Shown here: piece by piece, positions 32,067 to 61,734 of the stretch
Layout of the letters: each line of letters begins with the position of its first letter
Position numbering within the stretch: position 1 is the stretch's first letter
Source of the DNA: Macrostomum lignano
Lineage: Eukaryota
Direction of reading: 5' to 3'
Length of the DNA stretch: 64,000 nt
NCBI GenBank assembly: GCA_002269645.1
Contig: NIVC01002420.1
Location: forward strand, 62,001-126,000
Program-made: the position numbers and the translations under genes
Notes under the pieces: generated by a model
What the model was told of the DNA's origin: nothing
The model's database searches: none
The model's input: only the letters and a program-made list of their open reading frames with translations

Positions 32067-32141
32067 TTGGCTTCTTTCTTCTTTGAGCTGCAATTTGACG
32101 TTGTCGAGGGGATGGGGTTGCGTCAGAATGATGTAACAATT

Positions 32142-32335
32142 AGACCTGCAGGATGTGTCTGATGAGCCTAAATGATGATACACTTAGACCTGCATGATGT
32201 GTCTGATGCGCCTAAATGATGATACACTTAGACCTGCATGATGTGTCTGATGCGCCTAAATGATGATACACTTAGACCTGCAGGATGTGTCTGATGTGCC
32301 TAAATGATGTTACATTTAGACCTGCATGATGTGTG
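32142..32335. repeat. 44-bp tandem repeat (ttagacctgcatgatgtgtctgatgcgcctaaatgatgatacac), ~4.5 copies
   Basis: Directly visible, just upstream of the protocadherin acceptor at 32088-89. Confidence 0.9.
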
Positions 32336-34956: not shown

Positions 34957-35825
<869 letters not shown>

Positions 35826-37132: not shown

Positions 37133-37172
37133 GCTAAACCCACAGATACTATATAGTATCTGTGGCTAAACC
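37133..37172. mobile_element. 24-bp perfect palindrome flanked by 8-bp direct repeats (mini-MITE or transposon footprint)
   Basis: gctaaacc-cacagatactatatagtatctgtg-gctaaacc. Confidence 0.6.
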
Positions 37173-37413: not shown

Positions 37414-38195
<782 letters not shown>

Positions 38196-38202
38196 GTGTT
38201 CT

Positions 38203-41200
38203 ACTGTCTGTGTGTTTACGTGGACTTTTTGGAAGTTCAGTAGCCTCGTTAGCTGGACCACCCGGTGTAGGTAGACCACTTAGGTGGACCACCAAATAAT
38301 TTTGTCTCTGGTGGGGTTAAGACGTTGATGAGGATCTCACATTAATATCAGGCGGGTCAAGAAAGGCTTAAGCAATTTTGGGATGTCTAGCATGGTTTTT
38401 TCCAAAGTTATTTGCATTTCAGTTTAGCTGGACCTCCAGCCTGGTCTACCTAAACCGAGCGAGTCTGGTCCACGTAAACCGAAAAATTTTAGAAAATTTT
38501 TTGAAAATCGTCTGTTTGTGTCTGTTTGTGTCTGTTTGTGTATAGCAGTTATTAAGCATAGATTCAATGCAAAACTGAATTTTTTACAGATCATTACCTT
38601 ACGAACAAAGGGCTATGTTAGCATCATATTATGACCGCTACTGGCTTTAAAACAATATGCGTTCAGTTCTTTGACATTCAAGTAGGTACGCAGGTTAATT
38701 TAAAATTCTGAAACCTCGTATGCGAAATGAATTTAATTAGCTCAGTTCCAGCAATTTCGGTATCGTACTCTGAGCACAGACTCACAGAGTAAGACACCAA
38801 CGTAAAGAAATCCAATTCGCGAACCAGATCAAACGATAAAGACTCCGAGACAAGAAAGATATTTAAGTGAAGCTTAAACAGTATTCTTCAATGACTTCTC
38901 AAGAACTCCCAGTGGTCCTTGATAGCCACACTGTGTAAATGCGAATTTCTGAGGCTCTACCATTACACAAGAAGAAAATAGCAACTTCATGAATTAAGTG
39001 CTTGCCAATTCTATACTAAACACTATGGGATATCCTGTTCTATCCTCCTCCAATGTTGGAAGAAGAAGATCCTAAGCTGCAGCCTTTCAAGTGCAAAGTT
39101 GAAGATGCAATTTACCTAAGTGAAAAGGACAATTCATACACGTACATGCAAAAGATTTGATCAACAGGGCGCAATTAAGAAGGGCCTTTTAGCTAGCGAT
39201 CGGGTCTCTGACTCTCTAGCAAAAGGTCGACTTGATTGCGGTCCCAGTAAAACTAAGAACGCATTAACAGTCAGCCTAACACTCACTGTCTGTTTGGTCC
39301 TCGTAAACACATGTGCAGGAGTAGAGGGTTGGAACAGACAGACAGACAGACCTCCCTTTCTATAATTGGCTGGTTAACACTTAGGAGGATAGATCCACCC
39401 CAACAATGGGACCGACCGCAGCCAATAGGAAACCCGCAAGCGTTCTGAAGGTAAGACAGTGGAGAGAGGGATATATAATGTCTAAGCGGGTGGTCCACGT
39501 AAACCATGGCGTAGTGAGACCAGACACAGACAGTTTAAAAGAAAGTACTTATAATCCATACTATACATCTCTAAAGGATTGCAATTGTATAAATTAGAAC
39601 GGTTTTTTATACTTATTAGGTCTAATGTTAATCCTTACTCCAAGTTTCATCCATATATAAATTTATTGTGCCAAAAACTGTAATCTACAACCAAGATATG
39701 ATGACCCGCAAAAAAGGACGCCAAGCCTAAAATAAAAACTTAAAAACACCGTCGCAAAAAGCCACTGCGAAATCGAAGAAGCCGCATCGCCTGGTAAAAA
39801 TCATCAGTCTGCTCGCAAATCCGTCGACACCGAGACCAGAAAAGTGAGTTTCGTTTGATGATCTCAAAGTAGCTAGCTGCAAGGCCTGCAACTCAATTGC
39901 TGTAGAGAAGCTGGTCCACCTAACCTACAGACACAACTGAAGCAGCTCTCTCAGTCTGTTTGAGGCTTTGGCTCTCAGAAGGTGGTCCACCTAACCTACA
40001 GACACAACTCGAACAGATTTCTCTGTCTGTTTAGGGCTCTGGCTCTCAGAGCCGCCGAGAAAGTTTAGTGCCGAGAATGCTTCAGTTTGTTAGAATGCAA
40101 TCAGAACAGATTCCTAGAAAGTGAGCTAGTCCAGCATCAAGGCAGAACATCTGGATGTGTAACGAGAGGCTTTTGGAGATTCCTGGCTCAGATTATCGCC
40201 TAGAAGTGCTGTGGAGTAGCTGGTCCACCTAACCTACAGACACAACTCGAACAGATTTCTCTGTCTGTTTAGGGCTCTGGCTCTCAGAAGGTGGTCCACA
40301 TAACCTACAGACACAACTCGAACAGATTTCTCTGTCTGTTTGAAGCTCTGGCTCTCAGAAGGTGGTCCACATAACCTACAGACACAACTCGAACAGATTT
40401 CTCTGTCTGTTTAGGGCTCTGGCTCTCAGAGCCGCCGAGAAAGTTTAGTGCCGAGAATGCTTCAGTTTGTTAGAATGCAATCAGAACAGATTCCTAGAAA
40501 GTGAGCTAGTCCAGCATCAAGGCAGAACATCTGGATGTGTAACGAGAGGCTCTCGGAGATTCCTGGCTCAGATTATCGCCTAGAAGTGCTGTGGAGTAGC
40601 TGGTCCACCTAACCTACAGACACAACTCGAACAGATTTCTCTGTCTGTTTGAGGCTCTGGCTCTTAGGTGGTCCACATAACCTACAGACACAACTGAAGC
40701 AGCTCTCTCAGTCTGTTTGAGGCTTTGGCTCTCAGAAGGTGGTCCACCTAACCTACAGACACAACTCGAACAGATTTCTCTGTCTGTTTAGGCTCTGGCT
40801 CTCAGAGCCGCCGAGAAAGTTTAGTGCCGAGAATGCTTCAGTTTGTTAGAATGCAATCAGAACAGATTCTTAGAAAGTGAGCTAGTCCAGCATCAAGGCA
40901 GAACATCTGGATGTGTAACGAGAGGCTCTCGGAGATTCCTGGCTCAGATTATCGCCTAGAAGTGCTGTGGAGTAGCTGGTCCACCTAACCTACAGACACA
41001 ACTCGAACAGATTTCTCTGTCTGTTTGAGGCTCTGGCTCTTAGGTGGTCCACATAACCTACAGACACAACTGAAGCAGCTCTCTCAGTCTGTTTGAGGCT
41101 TTGGCTCTCAGAAGGTGGTCCACATAACCTACAGACACAACTCGAACAGATTTCTCTGTCTGTTTAGGGCTCTGGCTCTCAGAGCCGCCGAGAAAGTTTA

Positions 41201-44200
41201 GTGCGAGAATGCTTCAGTTTGTTAGAATGCAATCAGAACAGATTCCTAGAAAGTGAGCTAGTCCAGCATCAAGGCAGAACATCTGGATGTGTAACGAGAG
41301 GCTCTCGGAGATTCCTGGCTCAGATTATCGCCTAGAAGTGCTGTGGAGTAGCTGGTCCACCTAACCTACAGACACAACTCGAACAGATTTCTCTGTCTGT
41401 TTGAGGCTCTGGCTCTTAGGTGGTCCACATAACCTACAGACACAACTGAAGCAGCTCTCTCAGTCTGTTTGAGGCTTTGGCTCTCAGAAGGTGGTCCACC
41501 TAACCTACAGACACAACTCGAACAGATTTCTCTGTCTGTTTAGGCTCTGGCTCTCAGAGCCGCCGAGAAAGTTTAGTGCCGAGAATGCTTCAGTTTGTTA
41601 GAATGCAATCAGAACAGATTCTTAGAAAGTGAGCTAGTCCAGCATCAAGGCAGAACATCTGGATGTGTAACGAGAGGCTCTCGGAGATTCCTGGCTCAGA
41701 TTATCGCCTAGAAGTGCTGTGGAGTAGCTGGTCCACCTAACCTACAGACACAACTCGAACAGATTTCTCTGTCTGTTTGAGGCTCTGGCTCTTAGGTGGT
41801 CCACATAACCTACAGACACAACTGAAGCAGCTCTCTCAGTCTGTTTGAGGCTTTGGCTCTCAGAAGGTGGTCCACATAACCTACAGACACAACTCGAACA
41901 GATTTCTCTGTCTGTTTAGGCTCTGGCTCTCAGAGCCGCCGAGAAAGTTTAGTGCAGAAAATGCTTCAGTTTGTTAGAATGCAATCAGAACAGATTCCTA
42001 GAAAGTGAGCTAGTCCAGCATCAAGGCAGAACATCTGGATGTGTAACGAAAGTCTCTTGGAGACTCCTGGCTCAGATTATCGCCTAGAAGTGCTGTGGAG
42101 TAGCTGGTCCACCTAACCTACAGACACAACTCGAACAGATTTCTCTGTCTGTTTAGGGCTCTGGCTCTCAGAGCCGCCGAGAAAGTTTAGTGCGAGAATG
42201 CTTCAGTTTGTTAGAATGCAATCAGAACAGATTCCTAGAAAGTGAGCTAGTCCAGCATCAAGGCAGAACATCTGGATGTGTAACGAGAGGCTTTTGGAGA
42301 TTCCTGGCTCAGATTATCGCCTAGAAGTGCTGTGGAGTAGCTGGTCCACCTAACCTACAGACACAACTCGAACAGATTTCTCTGTCTGTTTAGGGCTCTG
42401 GCTCTCAGAAGGTGGTCCACATAACCTACAGACACAACTCGAACAGATTTCTCTGTCTGTTTGAAGCTCTGGCTCTCAGAAGGTGGTCCACATAACCTAC
42501 AGACACAACTCGAACAGATTTCTCTGTCTGTTTAGGGCTCTGGCTCTCAGAGCCGCCGAGAAAGTTTAGTGCCGAGAATGCTTCAGTTTGTTAGAATGCA
42601 ATCAGAACAGATTCCTAGAAAGTGAGCTAGTCCAGCATCAAGGCAGAACATCTGGATGTGTAACGAGAGGCTCTCGGAGATTCCTGGCTCAGATTATCGC
42701 CTAGAAGTGCTGTGGAGTAGCTGGTCCACCTAACCTACAGACACAACTCGAACAGATTTCTCTGTCTGTTTGAGGCTCTGGCTCTTAGGTGGTCCACATA
42801 ACCTACAGACACAACTGAAGCAGCTCTCTCAGTCTGTTTGAGGCTTTGGCTCTCAGAAGGTGGTCCACCTAACCTACAGACACAACTCGAACAGATTTCT
42901 CTGTCTGTTTAGGCTCTGGCTCTCAGAGCCGCCGAGAAAGTTTAGTGCCGAGAATGCTTCAGTTTGTTAGAATGCAATCAGAACAGATTCTTAGAAAGTG
43001 AGCTAGTCCAGCATCAAGGCAGAACATCTGGATGTGTAACGAGAGGCTCTCGGAGATTCCTGGCTCAGATTATCGCCTAGAAGTGCTGTGGAGTAGCTGG
43101 TCCACCTAACCTACAGACACAACTCGAACAGATTTCTCTGTCTGTTTGAGGCTCTGGCTCTTAGGTGGTCCACATAACCTACAGACACAACTGAAGCAGC
43201 TCTCTCAGTCTGTTTGAGGCTTTGGCTCTCAGAAGGTGGTCCACATAACCTACAGACACAACTCGAACAGATTTCTCTGTCTGTTTAGGGCTCTGGCTCT
43301 CAGAGCCGCCGAGAAAGTTTAGTGCCGAGAATGCTTCAGTTTGTTAGAATGCAATCAGAACAGATTCCTAGAAAGTGAGCTAGTCCAGCATCAAGGCAGA
43401 ACATCTGGATGTGTAACGAGAGGCTCTCGGAGATTCCTGGCTCAGATTATCGCCTAGAAGTGCTGTGGAGTAGCTGGTCCACCTAACCTACAGACACAAC
43501 TCGAACAGATTTCTCTGTCTGTTTGAGGCTCTGGCTCTTAGGTGGTCCACATAACCTACAGACACAACTGAAGCAGCTCTCTCAGTCTGTTTGAGGCTTT
43601 GGCTCTCAGAAGGTGGTCCACCTAACCTACAGACACAACTCGAACAGATTTCTCTGTCTGTTTAGGCTCTGGCTCTCAGAGCCGCCGAGAAAGTTTAGTG
43701 CCGAGAATGCTTCAGTTTGTTAGAATGCAATCAGAACAGATTCTTAGAAAGTGAGCTAGTCCAGCATCAAGGCAGAACATCTGGATGTGTAACGAGAGGC
43801 TCTCGGAGATTCCTGGCTCAGATTATCGCCTAGAAGTGCTGTGGAGTAGCTGGTCCACCTAACCTACAGACACAACTCGAACAGATTTCTCTGTCTGTTT
43901 TGAGGCTCTGGCTCTTAGGTGGTCCACATAACCTACAGACACAACTGAAGCAGCTCTCTCAGTCTGTTTGAGGCTTTGGCTCTCAGAAGGTGGTCCACAT
44001 AACCTACAGACACAACTCGAACAGATTTCTCTGTCTGTTTAGGCTCTGGCTCTCAGAGCCGCCGAGAAAGTTTAGTGCAGAAAATGCTTCAGTTTGTTAG
44101 AATGCAATCAGAACAGATTCCTAGAAAGTGAGCTAGTCCAGCATCAAGGCAGAACATCTGGATGTGTAACGAAAGTCTCTTGGAGACTCCTGGCTCAGAT

Positions 44201-47200
44201 TATCGCCTAGAAGTGCTGTGGAGTAGCTGGTCCACCTAACCTACAGACACAACTCGAACAGATTTCTCTGTCTGTTTAGGGCTCTGGCTCTCAGAGCCGC
44301 CGAGAAAGTTTAGTGCCGAGAATGCTTCAGTTTGTTAGAATGCAATCAGAACAGATTCCTAGAAAGTGAGCTAGTCCAGCATCAAGGCAGAACATCTGGA
44401 TGTGTAACGAAAGTCTCTTGGAGACTCCTGGCTCAGATTATCGCCTAGAAGTGCTGTGGAGTAGCTGGTCCACCTAACCTACAGACACAACTCGAACAGA
44501 TTTCTCTGTCTGTTTAGGGCTCTGGCTCTCAGAGCCGCCGAGAAAGTTTAGTGCCGAGAATGCTTCAGTTTGTTAGAATGCAATCAGAACAGATTCCTAG
44601 AAAGTGAGCTAGTCCAGCATCAAGGCAGAACATCTGGATGTGTAACGAGAGGCTCTCGAAGATTCCTGGCTCAGATTATCGCCTAGAAGTGCTGTGGAGT
44701 AGCTGGTCCACCTAACCTACAGACACAACTCGAACAGATTTCTCTGTCTGTTTAGGGCTCTGGCTCTCAGAGCCGCCGAGAAAGTTTAGTGCCGAGAATG
44801 CTTCAGTTTGTTAGAATGCAATCAGAACAGATTCCTAGAAAGTGAGCTAGTCCAGCATCAAGGCAGAACATCTGGATGTGTAACGAGAGGCTTTTGGAGA
44901 TTCCTGGCTCAGATTATCGCCTAGAAGTGCTGTGGAGTAGCTGGTCCACCTAACCTACAGACACAACTCGAACAGATTTCTCTGTCTGTTTGAGGCTCTG
45001 GCTCTTAGGTGGTCCACATAACCTACAGACACAACTGAAGCAGCTCTCTCAGTCTGTTTGAGGCTTTGGCTCTCAGAAGGTGGTCCACATAACCTACAGA
45101 CACAACTCGAACAGATTTCTCTGTCTGTTTAGGCTCTGGCTCTCAGAGCCGCCGAGAAAGTTTAGTGCAGAAAATGCTTCAGTTTGTTAGAATGCAATCA
45201 GAACAGATTCCTAGAAAGTGAGCTAGTCCAGCATCAAGGCAGAACATCTGGATGTGTAACGAAAGTCTCTTGGAGACTCCTGGCTCAGATTATCGCCTAG
45301 AAGTGCTGTGGAGTAGCTGGTCCACCTAACCTACAGACACAACTCGAACAGATTTCTCTGTCTGTTTGAGGCTCTGGCTCTTAGGTGGTCCACATAACCT
45401 ACAGACACAACTGAAGCAGCTCTCTCAGTCTGTTTGAGGCTTTGGCTCTCAGAAGGTGGTCCACATAACCTACAGACACAACTCGAACAGATTTCTCTGT
45501 CTGTTTAGGCTCTGGCTCTCAGAGCCGCCGAGAAAGTTTAGTGCAGAAAATGCTTCAGTTTGTTAGAATGCAATCAGAACAGATTCCTAGAAAGTGAGCT
45601 AGTCCAGCATCAAGGCAGAACATCTGGATGTGTAACGAAAGTCTCTTGGAGACTCCTGGCTCAGATTATCGCCTAGAAGTGCTGTGGAGTAGCTGGTCCA
45701 CCTAACCTACAGACACAACTCGAACAGATTTCTCTGTCTGTTTAGGGCTCTGGCTCTCAGAGCCGCCGAGAAAGTTTAGTGCCGAGAATGCTTCAGTTTG
45801 TTAGAATGCAATCAGAACAGATTCCTAGAAAGTGAGCTAGTCCAGCATCAAGGCAGAACATCTGGATGTGTAACGAGAGGCTCTCGAAGATTCCTGGCTC
45901 AGATTATCGCCTAGAAGTGCTGTGGAGTAGCTGGTCCACCTAACCTACAGACACAACTCGAACAGATTTCTCTGTCTGTTTGAGGCTCTGGCTCTTAGGT
46001 GGTCCACATAACCTACAGACACAACTGAAGCAGCTCTCTCAGTCTGTTTGAGGCTTTGGCTCTCAGAAGGTGGTCCACCTAACCTACAGACACAACTCGA
46101 ACAGATTTCTCTGTCTGTTTAGGCTCTGGCTCTCAGAGCCGCCGAGAAAGTTTAGTGCCGAGAATGCTTCAGTTTGTTAGAATGCAATCAGAACAGATTC
46201 TTAGAAAGTGAGCTAGTCCAGCATCAAGGCAGAACATCTGGATGTGTAACGAGAGGCTCTCGAAGATTCCTGGCTCAGATTATCGCCTAGAAGTGCTGTG
46301 GAGTAGCTGGTCCACCTAACCTACAGACACAACTCGAACAGATTTCTCTGTCTGTTTGAGGCTCTGGCTCTTAGGTGGTCCACATAACCTACAGACACAA
46401 CTGAAGCAGCTCTCTCAGTCTGTTTGAGGCTTTGGCTCTCAGAAGGTGGTCCACATAACCTACAGACACAACTCGAACAGATTTCTCTGTCTGTTTAGGC
46501 TCTGGCTCTCAGAGCCGCCGAGAAAGTTTAGTGCAGAAAATGCTTCAGTTTGTTAGAATGCAATCAGAACAGATTCCTAGAAAGTGAGCTAGTCCAGCAT
46601 CAAGGCAGAACATCTGGATGTGTAACGAAAGTCTCTTGGAGACTCCTGGCTCAGATTATCGCCTAGAAGTGCTGTGGAGTAGCTGGTCCACCTAACCTAC
46701 AGACACAACTCGAACAGATTTCTCTGTCTGTTTAGGGCTCTGGCTCTCAGAGCCGCCGAGAAAGTTTAGTGCCGAGAATGCTTCAGTTTGTTAAAATGCA
46801 ATCAGAACAGATTCCTAGAAAGTGAGCTAGTCCAGCATCAAGGCAGAACATCTGGATGTGTAACGAAAGTCTCTTGGAGACTCCTGGCTCAGATTATCGC
46901 CTAGAAGTGCTGTGGAGTAGCTGGTCCACCTAACCTACAGACACAACTCGAACAGATTTCTCTGTCTGTTTGAGGCTCTGGCTCTCAGAGCCGCCGAGAA
47001 AGTTTAGTGCCGAGAATGCTTCAGTTTGTTAGAATACAATCAGAACAGATTCCTAGAAAGTGAGCTAGTCCAGCATCAAGGCAGAACATCTGGATGTGTA
47101 ACGAGAGGCTCTCGAAGATTCCTGGCTCAGATTATCGCCTAGAAGTGCTGTGGAGTAGCTGGTCCACCTAACCTACAGACACAACTCGAACAGATTTCTC

Positions 47201-50200
47201 TGTCTGTTTAGGCTCTGGCTCTCAGAGCCGCCGAGAAAGTTTAGTGCAGAAAATGCTTCAGTTTGTTAGAATGCAATCAGAACAGATTCCTAGAAAGTGA
47301 GCTAGTCCAGCATCAAGGCAGAACATCTGGATGTGTAACGAGAGGCTCTCGAAGATTCCTGGCTCAGATTATCGCCTAGAAGTGCTGTGGAGTAGCTGGT
47401 CCACCTAACCTACAGACACAACTCGAACAGATTTCTCTGTCTGTTTAGGGCTCTGGCTCTCAGAGCCGCCGAGAAAGTTTAGTGCCGAGAATGCTTCAGT
47501 TTGTTAGAATGCAATCAGAACAGATTCCTAGAAAGTGAGCTAGTCCAGCATCAAGGCAGAACATCTGGATGTGTAACGAGAGGCTCTCGAAGATTCCTGG
47601 CTCAGATTATCGCCTAGAAGTGCTGTGGAGTAGCTGGTCCACCTAACCTACAGACACAACTCGAACAGATTTCTCTGTCTGTTTGAGGCTCTGGCTCTTA
47701 GGTGGTCCACATAACCTACAGACACAACTGAAGCAGCTCTCTCAGTCTGTTTGAGGCTTTGGCTCTCAGAAGGTGGTCCACATAACCTACAGACACAACT
47801 CGAACAGATTTCTCTGTCTGTTTAGGCTCTGGCTCTCAGAGCCGCCGAGAAAGTTTAGTGCCGAGAATGCTTCAGTTTGTTAGAATGCAATCAGAACAGA
47901 TTCTTAGAAAGTGAGCTAGTCCAGCATCAAGGCAGAACATCTGGATGTGTAACGAGAGGCTCTCGAGATTCCTGGCTCAGATTATCGCCTAGAAGTGCTG
48001 TGGAGTAGCTGGTCCACCTAACCTACAGACACAACTCGAACAGATTTCTCTGTCTGTTTGAGGCTCTGGCTCTCAGAGCCGCCGAGAAAGTTTAGTGCCG
48101 AGAATGCTTCAGTTTGTTAGAATACAATCAGAACAGATTCCTAGAAAGTGAGCTAGTCCAGCATCAAGGCAGAACATCTGGATGTGTAACGAGAGGCTCT
48201 CGAAGATTCCTGGCTCAGATTATCGCCTAGAAGTGCTGTGGAGTAGCTGGTCCACCTAACCTACAGACACAACTCGAACAGATTTCTCTGTCTGTTTAGG
48301 GCTCTGGCTCTCAGAAGGTGGTCCACATAACCTACAGACACAACTCGAACAGATTTCTCTGTCTGTTTGAAGCTCTGGCTCTCAGAAGGTGGTCCACATA
48401 ACCTACAGACACAACTCGAACAGATTTCTCTGTCTGTTTGAGGCTCTGGCTCTCAGAGCCGCCGAGAAAGTTTAGTGCCGAGAATGCTTCAGTTTGTTAG
48501 AATGCAATCAGAACAGATTCCTAGAAAGTGAGCTAGTCCAGCATCAAGGCAGAACATCTGGATGTGTAACGAGAGGCTTTTGGAGATTCCTGGCTCAGAT
48601 TATCGCCTAGAAGTGCTGTGGAGTAGCTGGTCCACCTAACCTACAGACACAACTCGAACAGATTTCTCTGTCTGTTTGAGGCTCTGGCTCTTAGGTGGTC
48701 CACATAACCTACAGACACAACTGAAGCAGCTCTCTCAGTCTGTTTGAGGCTTTGGCTCTCAGAAGGTGGTCCACCTAACCTACAGACACAACTCGAACAG
48801 ATTTCTCTGTCTGTTTAGGCTCTGGCTCTCAGAGCCGCCGAGAAAGTTTAGTGCCGAGAATGCTTCAGTTTGTTAGAATGCAATCAGAACAGATTCTTAG
48901 AAAGTGAGCTAGTCCAGCATCAAGGCAGAACATCTGGATGTGTAACGAGAGGCTCTCGGAGATTCCTGGCTCAGATTATCGCCTAGAAGTGCTGTGGAGT
49001 AGCTGGTCCACCTAACCTACAGACACAACTCGAACAGATTTCTCTGTCTGTTTGAGGCTCTGGCTCTTAGGTGGTCCACATAACCTACAGACACAACTGA
49101 AGCAGCTCTCTCAGTCTGTTTGAGGCTTTGGCTCTCAGAAGGTGGTCCACATAACCTACAGACACAACTCGAACAGATTTCTCTGTCTGTTTAGGCTCTG
49201 GCTCTCAGAGCCGCCGAGAAAGTTTAGTGCAGAAAATGCTTCAGTTTGTTAGAATGCAATCAGAACAGATTCCTAGAAAGTGAGCTAGTCCAGCATCAAG
49301 GCAGAACATCTGGATGTGTAACGAAAGTCTCTTGGAGACTCCTGGCTCAGATTATCGCCTAGAAGTGCTGTGGAGTAGCTGGTCCACCTAACCTACAGAC
49401 ACAACTCGAACAGATTTCTCTGTCTGTTTAGGGCTCTGGCTCTCAGAGCCGCCGAGAAAGTTTAGTGCCGAGAATGCTTCAGTTTGTTAAAATGCAATCA
49501 GAACAGATTCCTAGAAAGTGAGCTAGTCCAGCATCAAGGCAGAACATCTGGATGTGTAACGAAAGTCTCTTGGAGACTCCTGGCTCAGATTATCGCCTAG
49601 AAGTGCTGTGGAGTAGCTGGTCCACCTAACCTACAGACACAACTCGAACAGATTTCTCTGTCTGTTTGAGGCTCTGGCTCTCAGAGCCGCCGAGAAAGTT
49701 TAGTGCCGAGAATGCTTCAGTTTGTTAGAATACAATCAGAACAGATTCCTAGAAAGTGAGCTAGTCCAGCATCAAGGCAGAACATCTGGATGTGTAACGA
49801 GAGGCTCTCGAAGATTCCTGGCTCAGATTATCGCCTAGAAGTGCTGTGGAGTAGCTGGTCCACCTAACCTACAGACACAACTCGAACAGATTTCTCTGTC
49901 TGTTTAGGCTCTGGCTCTCAGAGCCGCCGAGAAAGTTTAGTGCAGAAAATGCTTCAGTTTGTTAGAATGCAATCAGAACAGATTCCTAGAAAGTGAGCTA
50001 GTCCAGCATCAAGGCAGAACATCTGGATGTGTAACGAGAGGCTCTCGAAGATTCCTGGCTCAGATTATCGCCTAGAAGTGCTGTGGAGTAGCTGGTCCAC
50101 CTAACCTACAGACACAACTCGAACAGATTTCTCTGTCTGTTTAGGGCTCTGGCTCTCAGAGCCGCCGAGAAAGTTTAGTGCCGAGAATGCTTCAGTTTGT

Positions 50201-53200
50201 TAGAATGCAATCAGAACAGATTCCTAGAAAGTGAGCTAGTCCAGCATCAAGGCAGAACATCTGGATGTGTAACGAGAGGCTCTCGAAGATTCCTGGCTCA
50301 GATTATCGCCTAGAAGTGCTGTGGAGTAGCTGGTCCACCTAACCTACAGACACAACTCGAACAGATTTCTCTGTCTGTTTGAGGCTCTGGCTCTTAGGTG
50401 GTCCACATAACCTACAGACACAACTGAAGCAGCTCTCTCAGTCTGTTTGAGGCTTTGGCTCTCAGAAGGTGGTCCACCTAACCTACAGACACAACTCGAA
50501 CAGATTTCTCTGTCTGTTTAGGCTCTGGCTCTCAGAGCCGCCGAGAAAGTTTAGTGCCGAGAATGCTTCAGTTTGTTAGAATGCAATCAGAACAGATTCT
50601 TAGAAAGTGAGCTAGTCCAGCATCAAGGCAGAACATCTGGATGTGTAACGAGAGGCTCTCGGAGATTCCTGGCTCAGATTATCGCCTAGAAGTGCTGTGG
50701 AGTAGCTGGTCCACCTAACCTACAGACACAACTCGAACAGATTTCTCTGTCTGTTTGAGGCTCTGGCTCTCAGAGCCGCCGAGAAAGTTTAGTGCCGAGA
50801 ATGCTTCAGTTTGTTAGAATACAATCAGAACAGATTCCTAGAAAGTGAGCTAGTCCAGCATCAAGGCAGAACATCTGGATGTGTAACGAGAGGCTCTCGA
50901 AGATTCCTGGCTCAGATTATCGCCTAGAAGTGCTGTGGAGTAGCTGGTCCACCTAACCTACAGACACAACTCGAACAGATTTCTCTGTCTGTTTAGGCTC
51001 TGGCTCTCAGAGCCGCCGAGAAAGTTTAGTGCAGAAAATGCTTCAGTTTGTTAGAATGCAATCAGAACAGATTCCTAGAAAGTGAGCTAGTCCAGCATCA
51101 AGGCAGAACATCTGGATGTGTAACGAAAGTCTCTTGGAGACTCCTGGCTCAGATTATCGCCTAGAAGTGCTGTGGAGTAGCTGGTCCACCTAACCTACAG
51201 ACACAACTCGAACAGATTTCTCTGTCTGTTTAGGGCTCTGGCTCTCAGAGCCGCCGAGAAAGTTTAGTGCCGAGAATGCTTCAGTTTGTTAGAATGCAAT
51301 CAGAACAGATTCCTAGAAAGTGAGCTAGTCCAGCATCAAGGCAGAACATCTGGATGTGTAACGAGAGGCTCTCGGAGATTCCTGGCTCAGATTATCGCCT
51401 AGAAGTGCTGTGGAGTAGCTGGTCCACCTAACCTACAGACACAACTCGAACAGATTTCTCTGTCTGTTTGAGGCTCTGGCTCTCAGAGCCGCCGAGAAAG
51501 TTTAGTGCCGAGAATGCTTCAGTTTGTTAGAATGCAATCAGAACAGATTCCTAGAAAGTGAGCTAGTCCAGCATCAAGGCAGAACATCTGGATGTGTAAC
51601 GAGAGGCTCTCGAAGATTCCTGGCTCAGATTATCGCCTAGAAGTGCTGTGGAGTAGCTGGTCCACCTAACCTACAGACACAACTCGAACAGATTTCTCTG
51701 TCTGTTTAGGCTCTGGCTCTCAGAGCCGCCGAGAAAGTTTAGTGCAGAAAATGCTTCAGTTTGTTAGAATGCAATCAGAACAGATTCCTAGAAAGTGAGC
51801 TAGTCCAGCATCAAGGCAGAACATCTGGATGTGTAACGAAAGTCTCTTGGAGACTCCTGGCTCAGATTATCGCCTAGAAGTGCTGTGGAGTAGCTGGTCC
51901 ACCTAACCTACAGACACAACTCGAACAGATTTCTCTGTCTGTTTAGGGCTCTGGCTCTCAGAGCCGCCGAGAAAGTTTAGTGCCGAGAATGCTTCAGTTT
52001 GTTAGAATGCAATCAGAACAGTTTCCTAGAAAGTGAGCTAGTCCAGCATCAAGGTAGAACATCTGGATGTGTAACGAGAGGCTCTCGGAGATTCCTGGCT
52101 CAGATTATCGCCTAGAAGTGCTGTGGAGTAGCTGGTCCACCTAACCTACAGACACAACTCGAACAGATTTCTCTGTCTGTTTAGGGCTCTGGCTCTCAGA
52201 GCCGCCGAGAAAGTTTAGTGCCGAGAATGCTTCAGTTTGTTAGAATGCAATCAGAACAGATTCCTAGAAAGTGAGCTAGTCCAGCATCAAGGCAGAACAT
52301 CTGGATGTGTAACGAGAGGCTTTTGGAGATTCCTGGCTCAGATTATCGCCTAGAAGTGCTGTGGAGTAGCTGGTCCACCTAACCTACAGACACAACTCGA
52401 ACAGATTTCTCTGTCTGTTTAGGGCTCTGGCTCTCAGAAGGTGGTCCACATAACCTACAGACACAACTCGAACAGATTTCTCTGTCTGTTTGAAGCTCTG
52501 GCTCTCAGAAGGTGGTCCACATAACCTACAGACACAACTCGAACAGATTTCTCTGTCTGTTTAGGGCTCTGGCTCTCAGAGCCGCCGAGAAAGTTTAGTG
52601 CCGAGAATGCTTCAGTTTGTTAGAATGCAATCAGAACAGATTCCTAGAAAGTGAGCTAGTCCAGCATCAAGGCAGAACATCTGGATGTGTAACGAGAGGC
52701 TCTCGGAGATTCCTGGCTCAGATTATCGCCTAGAAGTGCTGTGGAGTAGCTGGTCCACCTAACCTACAGACACAACTCGAACAGATTTCTCTGTCTGTTT
52801 AGGGCTCTGGCTCTCAGAGCCGCCGAGAAAGTTTAGTGCCGAGAATGCTTCAGTTTGTTAGAATACAATCAGAACAGATTCCTAGAAAGTGAGCTAGTCC
52901 AGCATCAAGGCAGAACATCTGGATGTGTAACGAGAGGCTCTCGAAGATTCCTGGCTCAGATTATCGCCTAGAAGTGCTGTGGAGTAGCTGGTCCACCTAA
53001 CCTACAGACACAACTCGAACAGATTTCTCTGTCTGTTTAGGCTCTGGCTCTCAGAGCCGCCGAGAAAGTTTAGTGCAGAAAATGCTTCAGTTTGTTAGAA
53101 TGCAATCAGAACAGATTCCTAGAAAGTGAGCTAGTCCAGCATCAAGGCAGAACATCTGGATGTGTAACGAAAGTCTCTTGGAGACTCCTGGCTCAGATTA

Positions 53201-56200
53201 TCGCCTAGAAGTGCTGTGGAGTAGCTGGTCCACCTAACCTACAGACACAACTCGAACAGATTTCTCTGTCTGTTTAGGGCTCTGGCTCTCAGAGCCGCCG
53301 AGAAAGTTTAGTGCCGAGAATGCTTCAGTTTGTTAGAATGCAATCAGAACAGATTCCTAGAAAGTGAGCTAGTCCAGCATCAAGGCAGAACATCTGGATG
53401 TGTAACGAGAGGCTCTCGGAGATTCCTGGCTCAGATTATCGCCTAGAAGTGCTGTGGAGTAGCTGGTCCACCTAACCTACAGACACAACTCGAACAGATT
53501 TCTCTGTCTGTTTAGGGCTCTGGCTCTCAGAAGGTGGTCCACATAACCTACAGACACAACTCGAACAGATTTCTCTGTCTGTTTGAAGCTCTGGCTCTCA
53601 GAAGGTGGTCCACATAACCTACAGACACAACTCGAACAGATTTCTCTGTCTGTTTAGGGCTCTGGCTCTCAGAGCCGCCGAGAAAGTTTAGTGCCGAGAA
53701 TGCTTCAGTTTGTTAGAATGCAATCAGAACAGATTCCTAGAAAGTGAGCTAGTCCAGCATCAAGGCAGAACATCTGGATGTGTAACGAGAGGCTCTCGGA
53801 GATTCCTGGCTCAGATTATCGCCTAGAAGTGCTGTGGAGTAGCTGGTCCACCTAACCTACAGACACAACTCGAACAGATTTCTCTGTCTGTTTGAGGCTC
53901 TGGCTCTTAGGTGGTCCACATAACCTACAGACACAACTGAAGCAGCTCTCTCAGTCTGTTTGAGGCTTTGGCTCTCAGAAGGTGGTCCACCTAACCTACA
54001 GACACAACTCGAACAGATTTCTCTGTCTGTTTAGGCTCTGGCTCTCAGAGCCGCCGAGAAAGTTTAGTGCCGAGAATGCTTCAGTTTGTTAGAATGCAAT
54101 CAGAACAGATTCTTAGAAAGTGAGCTAGTCCAGCATCAAGGCAGAACATCTGGATGTGTAACGAGAGGCTCTCGGAGATTCCTGGCTCAGATTATCGCCT
54201 AGAAGTGCTGTGGAGTAGCTGGTCCACCTAACCTACAGACACAACTCGAACAGATTTCTCTGTCTGTTTGAGGCTCTGGCTCTTAGGTGGTCCACATAAC
54301 CTACAGACACAACTGAAGCAGCTCTCTCAGTCTGTTTGAGGCTTTGGCTCTCAGAAGGTGGTCCACATAACCTACAGACACAACTCGAACAGATTTCTCT
54401 GTCTGTTTAGGCTCTGGCTCTCAGAGCCGCCGAGAAAGTTTAGTGCAGAAAATGCTTCAGTTTGTTAGAATGCAATCAGAACAGATTCCTAGAAAGTGAG
54501 CTAGTCCAGCATCAAGGCAGAACATCTGGATGTGTAACGAAAGTCTCTTGGAGACTCCTGGCTCAGATTATCGCCTAGAAGTGCTGTGGAGTAGCTGGTC
54601 CACCTAACCTACAGACACAACTCGAACAGATTTCTCTGTCTGTTTAGGGCTCTGGCTCTCAGAGCCGCCGAGAAAGTTTAGTGCCGAGAATGCTTCAGTT
54701 TGTTAAAATGCAATCAGAACAGATTCCTAGAAAGTGAGCTAGTCCAGCATCAAGGCAGAACATCTGGATGTGTAACGAAAGTCTCTTGGAGACTCCTGGC
54801 TCAGATTATCGCCTAGAAGTGCTGTGGAGTAGCTGGTCCACCTAACCTACAGACACAACTCGAACAGATTTCTCTGTCTGTTTGAGGCTCTGGCTCTCAG
54901 AGCCGCCGAGAAAGTTTAGTGCAGAAAATGCTTCAGTTTGTTAGAATGCAATCAGAACAGATTCCTAGAAAGTGAGCTAGTCCAGCATCAAGGCAGAACA
55001 TCTGGATGTGTAACGAGAGGCTCTCGGAGATTCCTGGCTCAGATTATCGCCTAGAAGTGCTGTGGAGTAGCTGGTCCACCTAACCTACAGACACAACTCG
55101 AACAGATTTCTCTGTCTGTTTGAGGCTCTGGCTCTCAGAGCCGCCGAGAAAGTTTAGTGCCGAGAATGCTTCAGTTTGTTAGAATACAATCAGAACAGAT
55201 TCCTAGAAAGTGAGCTAGTCCAGCATCAAGGCAGAACATCTGGATGTGTAACGAGAGGCTCTCGAAGATTCCTGGCTCAGATTATCGCCTAGAAGTGCTG
55301 TGGAGTAGCTGGTCCACCTAACCTACAGACACAACTCGAACAGATTTCTCTGTCTGTTTAGGCTCTGGCTCTCAGAGCCGCCGAGAAAGTTTAGTGCAGA
55401 AAATGCTTCAGTTTGTTAGAATGCAATCAGAACAGATTCCTAGAAAGTGAGCTAGTCCAGCATCAAGGCAGAACATCTGGATGTGTAACGAAAGTCTCTT
55501 GGAGACTCCTGGCTCAGATTATCGCCTAGAAGTGCTGTGGAGTAGCTGGTCCACCTAACCTACAGACACAACTCGAACAGATTTCTCTGTCTGTTTGAGG
55601 CTCTGGCTCTCAGAGCCGCCGAGAAAGTTTAGTGCCGAGAATGCTTCAGTTTGTTAGAATACAATCAGAACAGATTCCTAGAAAGTGAGCTAGTCCAGCA
55701 TCAAGGCAGAACATCTGGATGTGTAACGAGAGGCTCTCGGAGATTCCTGGCTCAGATTATCGCCTAGAAGTGCTGTGGAGTAGCTGGTCCACCTAACCTA
55801 CAGACACAACTCGAACAGATTTCTCTGTCTGTTTGAGGCTCTGGCTCTTAGGTGGTCCACATAACCTACAGACACAACTGAAGCAGCTCTCTCAGTCTGT
55901 TTGAGGCTTTTGCTCTTGGAAGGTGGTCCACCTAACCTACAGACACTACTGGAATAGATTTCTGTGTCTGTTTGATTGTGAGTTAATTTTATTTTCTACC
56001 TTTGTAGGAGCCTGTGGTTGATTTTGTTCGCCTGAGCTCGACGAGACTGACTGCGTTTCACCGAGATGAAGGTTAAAACGAACTGTAAAAGAAGATTCAA
56101 ACCACTAATTGACGAGAAATATAGAAAGGTTCATCATAGAGCTGAGATGACGAAAGCGGATTCGATGGCTGAGTAAGCTGAAATTCGTGAGAGAGGCAAT

Positions 56201-57043
56201 GACAGATCAATAATAGAAGCGGTCCCGGACCACGGAGGCAGGGAAGGTCCAGGAGAATATTTCGTAGAAAAAATAAGAAGATTAAGCCATCATCTGCGTG
56301 AACGAAAAGATGAAAGTCGGTAAAATGATTGGCTTATCATATGATTGCTCACCAACTCATTCAGTATAATAGGACTGGTGTAGTCAAATCAATTTAATTT
56401 CAGTTTCAGTAACTTTTGTCGTTATTAAAAATGCCCTTCAACTTCTTGTAGGCTCGTACTCGGATGACCTTTTTTAACTAATGGAATCTTACGTTTGTTA
56501 ACATGTATTTGAAGCATACATTTTGACCTAAATTAGTTTTAATGAGTTTACAGTTAGTATTTGATATGATTCGGTATTTATTTTCAAAATGCTTTATTTT
56601 CATTCACCTTCTTGTATTCACGCGACGCAACTAACTAATGCGATCGTACATTTGTTTAACCCGATTAACCTGATTAGTAATGCTAAATAAATTGGTTTGA
56701 ATTTGGGATATTTTCATTAAATGACGTCGTAACGCTTTTATCTGTTCTTTTTGAGAATTTCTGTTTTAATTAGTTCAAAAGAACAGTTTAAAGCAATAAA
56801 TTTTCTACAACGAAAGAGGTCTAACTAAACCAACTGTTTTTTTGCGGTCCACCTAACCCGGTCCCCAAAACGTAGTTAGTGAACCACCACAGTTTCCCCG
56901 AACTGGCTATTCCGTCAAGTTAACAAAAAGATAACCCTAGCTAGCCTTTCGCGTTGTCAAAACAGACTCTATTTTTTAACCGGAATTGCGTGGTCCACAT
57001 AACGCATTAACATAACTCAGGTCCCGCTAAACACACAGACAGT
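38203..57043. mobile_element. Putative ~18.8-kb TIR-bounded element containing a satellite array
   Basis: The left end actgtctgtgtgtttacgtggac (38203) matches the reverse complement of gtcccgctaaacacacagacagt (ending 57043) at 20/23, with the outer 16 bp identical. Subterminal ggtccac(c/g/a)taa motifs occur near both ends. No clear TSD or transposase. Confidence 0.5.
39910..55973. repeat. Composite satellite array, ~16 kb, with ~53 copies of a ~170-bp B unit, each accompanied by 1-3 ~67-71-bp A units (monomers ~238 and ~376 bp)
   Basis: A = ggtccacctaacctacagacacaactcgaacagatttctctgtctgttt...ggctctggctctcaga. B = gccgccgagaaagtttagtg...gtgctgtggagtagct. Period 238 bp at 44229/44467/44705; 376 bp at 40602/40978. 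Terminal units are more diverged. Confidence 0.98.
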
Positions 57044-57051
57044 CGTAAGAG

Positions 57052-57096
<45 letters not shown>

Positions 57097-57107
57097 GAAT
57101 GCCTGCC

Positions 57108-57170
<63 letters not shown>
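57052..57170. repeat. (TCTG)n microsatellite
   Basis: Directly visible, immediately outside the right TIR. Confidence 0.95.
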
Positions 57171-57176
<6 letters not shown>

Positions 57177-57654
57177 TTCCACAAGATTTTCCACAAGATG
57201 GATCCGTGACCCTAAACTGAAACGTAACCTCCGTAATCCAATTTCGTCAGTGAGCTTTTTCAGCATAAACATTGGCGTACGCAGAAACTGGGAGCTTTTG
57301 CGTAGCTTAAAAATGAACCAAGCTTGAAGGTTTGCAACACACAGCGAGAGCTGCTGCTTCACAGCGAGAGCTGCTTGTCCCCTAAAGCAACTGATGTTTT
57401 ATTCATTGATCAAGCGAGTTTTGAGTCCATCAATACCTGCTCAGAGCAACTTGAGCTCTCATCGCTCGTACAAGCTACGGAAAATGATTTAGGAATATTT
57501 TTTGAAAGTTGGACAACGAGGTGCACAGAGTGCGCATCGACACCCAGCAGCTGGTCGCCTCCTTCCCGACTCAGCGTTCCGGCTACCAACAGCTGGGCAG
57601 TGATGACACATGACTTGGGAGACACTGCTGAGAGAGTGCCAGGTCAAAGCCACG

Positions 57655-57890
57655 TCATAGCTAGGTCATAGCCGGGTCATAGCCAGGTCATAGCGACGTC
57701 ATATCCAGGACATAGCCGGGTCATAGTTAGGTCATAGCCGGGTCATAGTTAGGTCATAGCCGGGTCATAGCCAGATCAAAGCGAAAGTCATAGCCAGGTC
57801 ATAGCTAGGTCATAGCCAGGTCATAGCTAGGTCAAAGCCAAAGTCATAGCCAGTTCATAGCTAGGTCATAGCCAGGTCATAGTCAGGTCA
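57655..57890. repeat. 11-bp minisatellite (ggtcatagcca)n
   Basis: Directly visible. Confidence 0.92.
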
Positions 57891-58354
57891 ATTGTAAAAA
57901 CTTGTCAGTTCACGGCTGACAGGCTGACAGTTTTTATTAAGTCCACAAGTCTTCTACTTTTAGTTCCTTAAGTTGATTAAGAAATTTATTTCTTAAGATG
58001 ATAGTGCATATTTTATATAATGCTTATGATTAATATTATCACTAATATCCTACTAACAGCGATATATATAAATATTTGATTTCCTTTTTGTTTAGCATAG
58101 AATCGTAGTTAAAATGGTAATTTCTATTATATTCATAAAACAATTCGCATGCTAATGGTAAGCGCAATAATAACAATAATTTCTTTAAGTACATTGTAAA
58201 GGCGCTGTAAGATTTGGATTAATGATGAAATCATGACTAATATTTTCTGTTTCATACTAGCTAAAATAAGTTAATATTACTAATTAGCTGGTAGTATAAA
58301 TTATAATCTTGGTCTATCCCTCAGAAACTACATGAAACTGTTGTACCCCCCTCA

Positions 58355-61556: not shown

Positions 61557-61734
61557 CTGGATGTCGAGGAATGGAAATGATTTTTTGTAAGAAACTGCAA
61601 ATTAATATATGATCTATCAACAAAGTCAATCAATCAAGCAATCAAGCAATCATCAAGAAATCAATAATTCAATCAACTAATCAATTAATCAAATAAGTCA
61701 GGGTCGCTGATACACATTACTGGCATTTGAAGCA

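What the first reader, a model, noticed from the sequence alone, without database searches (positions are those of the whole stretch)
38203..57043. 16-kb satellite nested in a TIR-bounded element and apparently built from that element's own TIR motif
Seen in sequence: 23-bp inverted termini (38203 and 57043) enclose the whole array. The satellite A unit begins ggtccacctaacctacagaca, which aligns with the reverse complement of the left TIR (gtccacgtaaacacacagaca) and with subterminal motifs at 38467, 39492, 56847 and 56992. The array therefore holds roughly 100 same-orientation TIR-like sites, each followed by a short stem-loop (aacaga...tctgtt). The element is flanked on both sides by (TCTG)n, and the TIR itself starts with ctgtctgt. 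Established knowledge: foldback transposons and Helitron/Helentron derivatives can seed satellites. Inference: a transposon-born satellite caught in situ, perhaps from a microsatellite-targeting element, and a possible sink for transposase or a DNA-binding protein.
Basis: partly seen in the sequence, partly recalled or inferred. Interest (0 to 1): 0.72.

Follow-up and report, generated by a model that had tools for sequence, protein, structure and literature searches.

The report
Transposon-borne 16-kb satellite array
A non-coding mobile-element copy of about 18.9 kb in an unidentified animal genome has amplified one internal piece, which begins with a copy of the element's own end sequence, into a 16-kb tandem array; it is a clean example of a satellite born inside a transposon, but this has been seen before.

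Summary
A 23-nt inverted repeat (20/23) at 38203-38225 and 57021-57043 is the only such pair in the window. An 11-13-nt motif, GGTCCACNTAA(MC), occurs 111 times, all between 38214 and 57004 (0.4 expected). It forms mirror-image clusters inside both termini and heads every one of 103 tandem units (39893-55973, 16,081 bp). The longer end-type signature (GTCC-N3-TAA-N2-5-ACAGACA) is found only at the two termini and the 103 unit heads, all oriented like the right end. Both flanks are (GTCT)n on the same strand. Removing 38200-57054 and keeping one AGTGT restores an in-phase microsatellite variant seen seven other times.

The best reading is a non-autonomous cut-and-paste DNA transposon, superfamily unresolved. 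One end-like internal segment (71/68 bp) plus an unrelated 167 bp expanded by multi-unit unequal exchange.

Genome-wide copies, an autonomous partner, microsatellite targeting and a "transposase sink" could not be tested. The species is absent from every searchable collection.

Precedents exist: Tetris TIR-220, Galileo, Xstir, miDNA4 and Helentron central repeats. I rate it a new member of a known kind, of moderate interest.

The parts
37414..38193 (+). Left flanking (GTCT)n microsatellite, 195 units, with occasional TAGT variant units
   Evidence: TRF; phased print-out (171 GTCT and 8 TAGT of 195 units)
38195..38199 (+). AGTGT, left copy of the candidate 5-bp target-site duplication
   Evidence: The same pentamer sits at 57050-57054. 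Keeping one copy and removing 38200-57054 restores an in-phase GTCT..TAGT GTCT.. microsatellite.
38200..38225 (+). Left terminus: TCT followed by the 23-nt TIR ACTGTCTGTGTGTTTACGTGGAC (38203-38225)
   Evidence: only two matches in the window, inverted, 0 expected
38216..38479 (.). Left subterminal cluster of the GGTCCACNTAA motif. Copies at 38216, 38249, 38267, 38280 and 38424 are on the minus strand; copies at 38443 and 38467 are on the plus strand.
   Evidence: local inverted repeats I1 and I2
38480..39239 (.). Unique non-coding internal sequence of the left arm
   Evidence: No ORF over 81 aa; dense stops in all six frames; no Rfam match
39240..39351 (+). Internal diverged copy of the right end: a motif-like site, then AACGCATTAACA (12/12 with 57001-57012), then the TIR-like GGTCCTCGTAAACACATGTGCAGG, then (ACAG)4.5
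   Evidence: (75% over 56 nt, inverted against the left end plus flank)
39492..39534 (+). Second internal right-end-like module: GGTCCACGTAAAC, a 19-nt insert, then ACACAGACAGT (identical to the terminal 11 nt)
39893..55973 (+). Satellite array of 16,081 bp with 103 units. Unit types are a (71 bp), s (68 bp) and B (237/238 bp, an A-like head plus a 167-bp tail). Higher-order repeats are s-a-B (376 bp), a-a-B (380 bp) and B alone.
   Evidence: TRF; unit parsing; head conservation
55974..56817 (.). Unique non-coding internal sequence of the right arm
   Evidence: One 41-aa ORF only; one sub-threshold Rfam hit only
56818..57049 (+). Right subterminal motif cluster (56818, 56846, 56992 and 57020, all plus strand), the 23-nt TIR at 57021-57043, and CGTAAG at 57044-57049
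57050..57054 (+). AGTGT, right copy of the candidate 5-bp target-site duplication
57052..57176 (+). Right flanking (TGTC)n microsatellite, same strand and register as the left flank
   Evidence: TRF

Best explanation
The region 38200-57049 is one copy of a non-autonomous class II (cut-and-paste type) DNA transposon. Its superfamily is unresolved. It sits in a (GTCT)n microsatellite.

Its ends are defined by a 23-nt terminal inverted repeat and by mirror-image clusters of an 11-nt subterminal motif, GGTCCACNTAA. By analogy with hAT, P, CACTA and Mutator elements, I infer this motif to be the transposase-binding site.

An internal segment of 68-71 bp begins with a copy of the terminal sequence (motif plus ACAGACA) in right-end orientation. 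This segment, together with an adjacent unrelated 167 bp, was duplicated in tandem. It then grew by repeated multi-unit unequal exchange or replication slippage to 103 units (16 kb), with 376/380-bp and 238-bp higher-order periods.

The array encodes nothing. It is a satellite born in place from a transposon's own end module.

Shown: the anatomy, the statistics and the restored empty site. Inferred: mobility, motif function and the amplification mechanism.
For: 1. The TIR pair is unique in the window (2 hits at up to 3 mismatches, 0 expected). The imperfect inverted repeat extends to 59 nt.
2. The motif is confined to the element: 111 hits against 0.4 expected, none in the other 45 kb. The outermost copies are on the minus strand at the left end and the plus strand at the right end.
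3. The terminal-type signature occurs only at the two termini and the 103 unit heads (105 hits, 0 expected).
4. The first 26 nt of the head are invariant over the 103 units except position 8 (C 64, A 39), apart from a single T at position 23 in the last, truncated unit. Position 8 is the same position that is degenerate among the subterminal copies.
5. Both flanks are (GTCT)n on one strand. Deleting 38200-57054 while keeping one AGTGT gives an in-phase ...GTCT TAGT GTCT... 21-mer that occurs 7 other times in the window's (GTCT)n arrays. TAGT units make up only 4-5% of units.
6. There is no ORF over 81 aa and no RNA family.
7. Identical units recur up to 18 times, and multi-unit blocks such as 's1 a4 B5 B10 B11 B12 B8 s1 a4' recur. 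B units differ at only 16 of 238 columns.
8. Precedent: the Tetris TIR-220 repeats share a 37-bp stretch with the Tetris terminal domain and expand inside the element (PMC4079207).
Against: - Only one locus could be examined, so mobility and family copy number are unproven.
- No transposase gene lies in the window.
- The candidate duplication AGTGT is only 5 bp. It lies 3 nt (TCT) and 6 nt (CGTAAG) outside the inverted repeat, and it would arise by chance about 1 time in 20 given the TAGT variant frequency.
- The outer half of the TIR (CTGTCTGTGTG) is microsatellite-like, so the left boundary is ambiguous.
- Two extra right-end-like modules at 39240-39351 and 39492-39534 suggest a more complex history than a single clean insertion.
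- The origin of the 167-bp B tail is unexplained. It has no similarity to the flanks (72 of 500 shuffles do as well).
Confidence: 0.62

Rival explanations
1. The locus is a composite of two or more copies of the same family rather than one element. One version has a 1.1-1.3-kb element (38203 to 39319 or 39534) lying next to, or nested in the left part of, a second left-truncated copy that carries the array and ends at 57043. The enclosing 'TIR pair' would then belong to two different copies.
For: The block 39240-39351 is colinear with the true right end: motif, the identical 12-mer AACGCATTAACA, then a TIR-like 23-mer. It also pairs as an inverted repeat with the left terminus plus flank, 75% over 56 nt. 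The block 39492-39534 ends with the terminal 11-mer ACACAGACAGT.
Against: The internal copies are much more diverged than the outer pair (20/23). The flank of the 39297 copy is (ACAG)n, inverted relative to (GTCT)n, which does not fit a simple second insertion in the same microsatellite. The inverted repeat does not extend beyond the microsatellites (228 of 500 shuffles do as well). The restored empty site uses the outer pair.
Confidence: 0.18
2. It is a non-autonomous rolling-circle element (Helentron/HINE/DINE-1 type). The central tandem repeats would have been amplified during rolling-circle replication, and each unit would mimic a 3' end (subterminal inverted repeat plus stem-loop).
For: Central tandem repeats and associated microsatellites are typical of HINE/DINE-1 elements (PMC4067079; PMC12628747). 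The inverted repeat is short. A small hairpin follows each TIR-like head, and one also follows the right TIR by pairing with the flank. The inverted repeats lie 3-6 nt inside the putative ends.
Against: There is no 5'-TC...CTRR-3' with an A|T site, no T-runs and no TT site at the boundaries. The right inverted repeat is 6 nt, not 38-60 nt, from the putative 3' end, and no independent 3' palindrome follows it. Four or five mirrored copies of a subterminal motif at each end are not a Helentron feature. A possible 5-bp duplication exists, whereas Helitrons make none.
Confidence: 0.08
3. It is not a mobile element. It would be a host tandem array carrying a binding motif for a cellular DNA-binding protein, in a genome that makes tandem arrays everywhere. 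The inverted ends would be a by-product of motif copies next to microsatellite-like sequence.
For: About 25% of the rest of the window is unrelated micro- or minisatellite, so tandem amplification is rampant here. Only one locus was seen. Half of the TIR is low-complexity.
Against: The mirrored orientation of the motif clusters, the 59-nt imperfect inverted repeat, the uniqueness of the TIR pair and the in-phase restored microsatellite are all unexpected for a host array. They are all expected for an insertion.
Confidence: 0.08
4. It is an assembly artefact: collapsed or mis-joined repeats give a false array length or false junctions.
For: Near-identical units recur up to 18 times, which is hard to assemble. 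No reads are available to check.
Against: The array has an irregular, non-periodic order of 29 distinct unit variants with recurring multi-unit blocks. It also has diverged edge units and clean unique junctions on both sides. This is what long-read assemblies of real arrays look like.
Confidence: 0.04

Closest known systems
Tetris foldback transposon and its TIR-220 satellite (Drosophila virilis; PMC4079207)
   Same: The tandem repeat unit shares a stretch with the element's own terminal domain. Repeats expand inside the element to kb-size arrays still flanked by the terminal domains. The element is non-autonomous with no known partner. The authors propose that the repeats carry extra transposase-binding sites and that over-expansion ends mobility.
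   Different: In Tetris the repeats sit in both long inverted arms (a foldback structure). Here there is a single unidirectional block between unique arms. Here the unit is compound (a TIR-like 71 bp plus an unrelated 167 bp) with higher-order periods, and the insertion is flanked by (GTCT)n. There is no sequence similarity.
Galileo (P-superfamily foldback, D. buzzatii) internal TIR repeats with secondary THAP-binding sites (Marzo et al. 2013, as cited in PMC4079207)
   Same: Tandem repeats inside the element multiply the transposase-recognition sequence.
   Different: In Galileo, binding was shown experimentally and the repeats lie within long TIRs. Here binding is only inferred and the array is 16 kb.
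MITE-borne satellites: Xstir and miDNA4 in Xenopus, pearl/DTC84-type elements in bivalves (review PMC12628747)
   Same: A short TIR element carries an internal tandem repeat whose copy number varies and which can grow into satellite arrays.
   Different: In those cases the repeat is usually unrelated to the TIR or was captured. Many copies with 1 to n units are documented there, whereas here only one copy is visible.
Helentron/HINE/DINE-1 elements with central repeats; oyster Cg170-type satellites (PMC4067079, PMC8268682)
   Same: Short subterminal inverted repeats, an associated microsatellite, a central tandem array and small hairpins.
   Different: The defining end structure and target site are not met here (see the membership test). 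Multiple mirrored subterminal motifs point to cut-and-paste chemistry instead.
Microsatellite-associated DNA transposons: Micron (rice), MuTAnT (Medicago), TAFTA (maize), SaTar MULEs (guayule, rice) (PMC5907723, PMC4486113)
   Same: A TIR element is flanked on both sides by the same microsatellite. The flanks are often not clean target-site duplications, and the microsatellite may expand after insertion.
   Different: Those are plant elements, mostly at (TA)n, with 8-11-bp duplications when outside microsatellites. Here the host is an animal, the repeat is (GTCT)n, there is one insertion only, and the TIR tip itself resembles the flank motif.
CENP-B box in alpha satellite and Tigger/pogo transposon ends (own knowledge: Kipling and Warburton 1997)
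   Same: A satellite whose monomers carry a motif resembling a transposon end, recognised by a transposase-derived protein.
   Different: This is a functional analogy only. No protein, chromatin or centromere evidence exists here.

Membership tests
Class II cut-and-paste (TIR) DNA transposon, non-autonomous copy | Terminal inverted repeats at both ends | tested here: met
   23 nt, 20/23 matching, with the outer 16 perfect. It is the only such pair in 64 kb. It extends imperfectly to 59 nt.
Class II cut-and-paste (TIR) DNA transposon, non-autonomous copy | Target-site duplication of a superfamily-specific length | tested here: inconclusive
   A perfect 5-bp AGTGT lies at 38195-38199 and 57050-57054, offset 3 and 6 nt from the TIR. 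It restores an in-phase microsatellite variant. Chance is about 0.05. A longer reading gives 7/10. No superfamily can be assigned.
Class II cut-and-paste (TIR) DNA transposon, non-autonomous copy | Subterminal repeated motifs in mirrored orientation (as in hAT, P, CACTA and Mutator; own knowledge) | tested here: met
   four or five copies within about 250 nt of each end, on the minus strand at the left and the plus strand at the right.
Class II cut-and-paste (TIR) DNA transposon, non-autonomous copy | Multiple dispersed copies in the genome and an autonomous partner encoding a transposase | not testable with these tools
   The source genome is in no searchable collection. There is no other copy in the window. 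One possible distant relative lies in gutless-worm metagenome contigs.
Canonical Helitron | 5'-TC and CTRR-3' ends, insertion between A and T, a 16-20-nt hairpin about 11 nt from the 3' end, and no target-site duplication (PMC4067079) | tested here: not met
   The ends read TCTACTG... and ...CAGTCGTAAG, and the flanks are ...AGTGT and AGTGTC.... There is no CTRR and no A|T site.
Helentron / HINE / DINE-1 | 12-15-bp subterminal inverted repeats, 2-4 nt from the 5' end and 38-60 nt from the 3' end, with a 5-10-bp palindrome 8-35 nt from the 3' end (PMC4067079) | tested here: not met
   The left inverted repeat is 3 nt from the putative end, which fits. The right inverted repeat is 6 nt from the putative end, and the only hairpin there pairs the TIR with the flanking microsatellite.
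Helentron / HINE / DINE-1 | Insertion at TT with T-runs at the boundaries | tested here: not met
   no T-runs, and the right flank starts with A or C.
Helentron / HINE / DINE-1 | Central tandem repeats and/or a microsatellite | tested here: met
   This feature is not specific to the family.
Foldback elements (FB, Tetris, Galileo type) | Long inverted arms built from tandem sub-repeats on both sides | tested here: not met
   All 103 units lie on one strand in one block. The arms are unique sequence with only about 59 nt of inverted similarity.
Satellite DNA | Head-to-tail monomers in a kb-scale homogeneous array, often with higher-order periodicity | tested here: met
   16,081 bp with periods of 71/68, 238 and 376 bp. 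B units differ at 16 of 238 columns.
Satellite DNA | Presence at several loci, genomic abundance, heterochromatin or centromere association | not testable with these tools
   No genome, reads or cytology are available. The A-unit pattern is absent from the metagenome and viral collections.
Microsatellite-targeting transposon (Micron / MuTAnT / SaTar type) | Many independent insertions in the same kind of microsatellite | not testable with these tools
   There is one insertion in (GTCT)n. A second (TGTC)n array at 34959-35825 carries no element. The possible worm relative has its flanking repeats in inverted orientation.

The most novel reading that the evidence does not exclude
The array could be a functional platform of about 100 equally oriented transposon-end boxes, not just a by-product. 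The boxes would be bound by the family's transposase or a domesticated derivative. That would make it a newborn analogue of the CENP-B-box/alpha-satellite relation, still sitting inside its donor element, and it could act as a transposase sink or a chromatin nucleation site. A related possibility is that the element's tip (CTGTCTGT) mimics its (GTCT)n target, so that insertion is homology-guided.
Probability: 0.1. Interest if true: 0.65.

Novelty: new member of a known kind. Interest (0 to 1): 0.4.

Why it matters
Most transposon-to-satellite links are inferred after the donor element has decayed. Here the donor's two ends, its subterminal motif clusters, a plausible empty site and the whole 16-kb array are all intact in one gene-neighbouring, euchromatin-like locus. 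The order of events can therefore be read directly.

If the family proves active, the locus offers about 100 identical candidate transposase-binding sites for testing titration or chromatin effects. It adds an example rather than a new principle.

Tried and rejected
1. Other copies. The A-unit pattern was absent from the metagenome and viral collections. The TIR pattern was absent from bacterial and archaeal genomes. In metagenomes it gave one chance hit in a coding contig (L003) and five contigs that are a single gutless-worm locus. That locus shares only the terminal 23-mer and a weak opposing inverted repeat, so it is a lead, not proof.

2. Species identification. Three protein searches gave at most 40% identity for the cadherin and ankyrin ORFs. 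The best hit was 73% to an unnamed Logan transcript. Window ORFs are not on record. The run accessions are not in the literature.

3. Literature search by sequence strings found only unrelated primers.

4. B tail derived from the left arm: rejected, as 72 of 500 shuffles score as well.

5. A long foldback extending beyond the microsatellites: rejected, 228 of 500.

6. Homology of the A unit to the right TIR plus outside flank over 47 nt: the score beats mononucleotide shuffles, but the flank part is low-complexity TGTCTGT. I do not rely on it.

7. Structured RNA or tRNA-derived origin: no Rfam or tRNA hit.

8. Stem-loops as a strong signal: z is only -0.5 to -2.1.

9. Coding remnant: no ORF over 81 aa and stops throughout all six frames. 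No Pfam scan of these frames was run.
Full report
CONTEXT. The window is animal DNA. A protocadherin-like gene lies at 25.5-32.2 kb on the minus strand. An ankyrin-repeat ORF (Pfam Ank families only) with an adjacent ORF lacking any family match lies at 17.3-20.7 kb. An epoxide-hydrolase-like exon lies at 8.2-8.8 kb. No close relative is in the protein collection. The cadherin and ankyrin ORFs reach at most 40% identity. The best hit overall is 73%, to an unnamed Logan transcript contig. Neither window ORF looked up (the 887-aa ankyrin ORF and a 38-aa array ORF) is on record. The species therefore stays unknown, and no genome-wide test was possible. Outside the finding, about 11 kb of 45 kb is unrelated micro- or minisatellite, so this genome makes tandem arrays readily.

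- The left terminus ACTGTCTGTGTGTTTACGTGGAC (38203-38225) and the right terminus GTCCCGCTAAACACACAGACAGT (57021-57043) are inverted copies, matching at 20 of 23 positions.
- At up to 3 mismatches they are the only two matches in the window, against 0 expected. Imperfect pairing continues inward to 59 nt at 69%.
- The motif GGTCCACNTAAMC has 111 matches, all between 38214 and 57004, against 0.4 expected.
- A relaxed scan of the non-array arms shows mirrored clusters. The left end has 38216, 38249, 38267, 38280 and 38424 on the minus strand, then 38443 and 38467 on the plus strand. The right end has 56818, 56846, 56992 and 57020 on the plus strand.
- This layout is what cut-and-paste transposons with subterminal transposase-binding sites show. 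That comparison (Ac/hAT, P, En/Spm, Mutator) rests on my own knowledge.

THE ARRAY.
- It runs from 39893 to 55973 (16,081 bp) and holds 103 motif-headed units.
- Unit types are a (71 bp), s (68 bp) and B (237/238 bp). B is an A-like head plus a 167-bp tail.
- The units are arranged as s-a-B (376 bp), a-a-B (380 bp) and B alone.
- Homogeneity is high. The commonest a and s variants occur 18 times each, and 53 B units differ at 16 of 238 columns.
- The unit order is irregular, but multi-unit blocks recur, for example 'a2 a3 B2 s1 a4 B3 s1 a4' and 's1 a4 B5 B10 B11 B12 B8 s1 a4'. This is the signature of growth by unequal exchange of several units at a time.
- The edge units are the most diverged.

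IS THE UNIT BUILT FROM THE TIR? Yes, for its first 25 nt or so.
- The pattern GTCC-N3-TAA-N2-5-ACAGACA combines the motif with the terminal ACAGACA. It matches exactly 105 places, against 0 expected: the two termini in inverted orientation and the 103 heads, all oriented like the right end.
- The ordinary subterminal copies lack the ACAGACA part. The head therefore copies the terminal module specifically.
- Across the 103 units the first 26 nt are invariant except position 8 (C 64, A 39), apart from a single T at position 23 in the last, truncated unit. Position 8 is the same position that varies (G, C or A) among the subterminal copies.
- The a and s subtypes differ mainly downstream, at positions 27-41.
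- This fits a bipartite recognition site GGTCCAC-N-TAA. With only three or four founder lineages, however, it is weak evidence of constraint.
- The rest of the unit is not TIR-derived. The B tail matches nothing in the arms (72 of 500 shuffles do as well).
Their stability is ordinary, with z from -0.5 to -2.1.

INSERTION SITE.
- Both flanks are (GTCT)n on the same strand.
- The right TIR tip (ACACAGACAGT) is inverted relative to the adjoining (TGTC)n, so it belongs to the element and not to the microsatellite. On the left the tip is co-oriented with the flank, so that boundary is less sharp.
- AGTGT occurs at 38195-38199 and at 57050-57054. Removing 38200-57054 leaves ...GTCT GTCT TAGT GTCT GTCT..., which is in phase. 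The junction 21-mer occurs seven other times in the window's two (GTCT)n arrays.
- TAGT units make up only 4-5% of units. A matching variant at both junctions is therefore about a 1-in-20 coincidence.
- I take this as moderate support for a 5-bp duplication and for ends at 38200 and 57049, with the inverted repeats 3 and 6 nt inside. A longer reading, GTCTTAGTGT against GTAAGAGTGT, matches at 7 of 10.
- No superfamily can be named from this.
- A second (TGTC)n array at 34959-35825 has no element next to it. Preference for this microsatellite is unproven.

- The left arm contains two more right-end-like modules.
- The block 39240-39351 is colinear with 56992-57043. It has a motif-like site, the identical 12-mer AACGCATTAACA and a TIR-like 23-mer, and it is followed by (ACAG)4.5.
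- The block 39492-39534 is GGTCCACGTAAAC, a 19-nt insert, then the terminal 11-mer.
- The element has therefore duplicated its right-end module more than once. Alternatively, the locus is a composite of family copies. I keep that as the main rival, at 0.18.
- I tested whether the inverted similarity continues beyond the microsatellites, which would make a large foldback. It does not.

NON-CODING.
- No ORF exceeds 81 aa in the arms or 44 aa in the array, and stops are dense in all six frames.
- There is no tRNA and no Rfam family.

RELATIVES ELSEWHERE.
- The A-head pattern is absent from JGI metagenome contigs and IMG/VR.
- The TIR pattern gave six metagenome contigs. One is a chance match inside GC-rich coding-like sequence.
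- The other five are one intronic locus of gutless-worm metagenomes. There, GGTCCAACTAAACACACAGACAG is followed by (ACAG)n. About 110 nt upstream lies an opposing ...TGTGTAGTGGGAC preceded by a TGTC-like repeat.
- This could be a MITE-sized distant relative. However, 19 of the 23 matching bases were fixed by my query and the rest is low-complexity, so I give it little weight.

COMPARISON WITH KNOWN SYSTEMS.
- The closest precedent is Tetris in Drosophila virilis. Its TIR-220 repeats share a 37-bp stretch with the terminal domain, expand within the element, and were proposed to carry extra transposase-binding sites, as shown for Galileo (PMC4079207).
- MITE-borne satellites (Xstir, miDNA4) and Helentron central repeats are reviewed in PMC12628747.
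- Against the Helentron/HINE definition in PMC4067079, the end spacing, the 3' palindrome and the TT/T-run target are not met. Canonical Helitron ends are also not met.
- Foldback architecture is not met, because the array is one unidirectional block.
- Microsatellite-flanked MULEs (SaTar, TAFTA; PMC5907723) show that same-strand microsatellite flanks with imperfect duplications are a known outcome of insertion at or near simple repeats.

VERDICT.
- The core interpretation, a satellite born in place from a transposon's own end module, is well supported anatomically. It remains unproven as to mobility, because only one copy can be seen.
- The microsatellite-targeting and sink ideas remain speculation.
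- The phenomenon is established in other taxa, so this is a new member of a known kind. Its value is as an unusually intact example.
- Interest is 0.4.

Noticed in passing
window 1-38193 and 57177-64000: Nineteen other micro- and minisatellite arrays with unrelated units of 4-44 bp cover about 11 kb of the 45 kb outside the element (about 25%). This is an unusually tandem-repeat-rich genome. Many listed ORFs (for example the RQTD and CLSV repeats) are just translations of these arrays.
   Followed up: partly
window 37140-37165: A perfect 26-bp palindrome, CCACAGATACTATATAGTATCTGTGG, is flanked on both sides by CTAAAC. It is unique in the window. It may be a minimal inverted-repeat insertion or an excision footprint.
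   Followed up: partly
window 39893-55973, B-unit alignment columns 183-197: Five linked substitutions, present in 15 of 53 B units, switch the tail between two different small hairpins of equal predicted energy (-3.7 kcal/mol): CGAGA..TCTCG and AGTCTC..GAGACT.
   Followed up: partly
L006 540-790 (same locus in L001, L002, L004 and L005): Gutless-worm metagenome contigs carry, in an intron, an inverted-repeat-bounded unit of about 135 bp. It ends in GGTCCAACTAAACACACAGACAG, with TGTC-like and (ACAG)n repeats on its two sides in inverted orientation. The motif GTGTAGTGGGACTGT recurs at L006 2577.
   Followed up: partly
window 39400-39480: CCAAT (gcagCCAATagg) and TATA-like (gggaTATATAAtg) elements lie about 50 nt apart, just upstream of the internal end-like module at 39492. 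This is a eukaryotic promoter-like arrangement. Transcription was not assessed.
   Followed up: no
window 25585-32183 (minus strand), 17341-20749 (plus strand), 8193-8759 (minus strand): These hold a protocadherin-like gene with a 20-bp minisatellite in an apparent intron (26455-26671), an ankyrin-repeat ORF with a neighbouring ORF of unknown family, and an epoxide-hydrolase-like exon. The hydrolase exon's closest relative is a 73%-identical Logan transcript from run SRR28338163.
   Followed up: partly
window 34959-35825: A second long (TGTC)n array has the same TAGT variant units as the array that flanks the element, but no transposon-like sequence beside it.
   Followed up: yes
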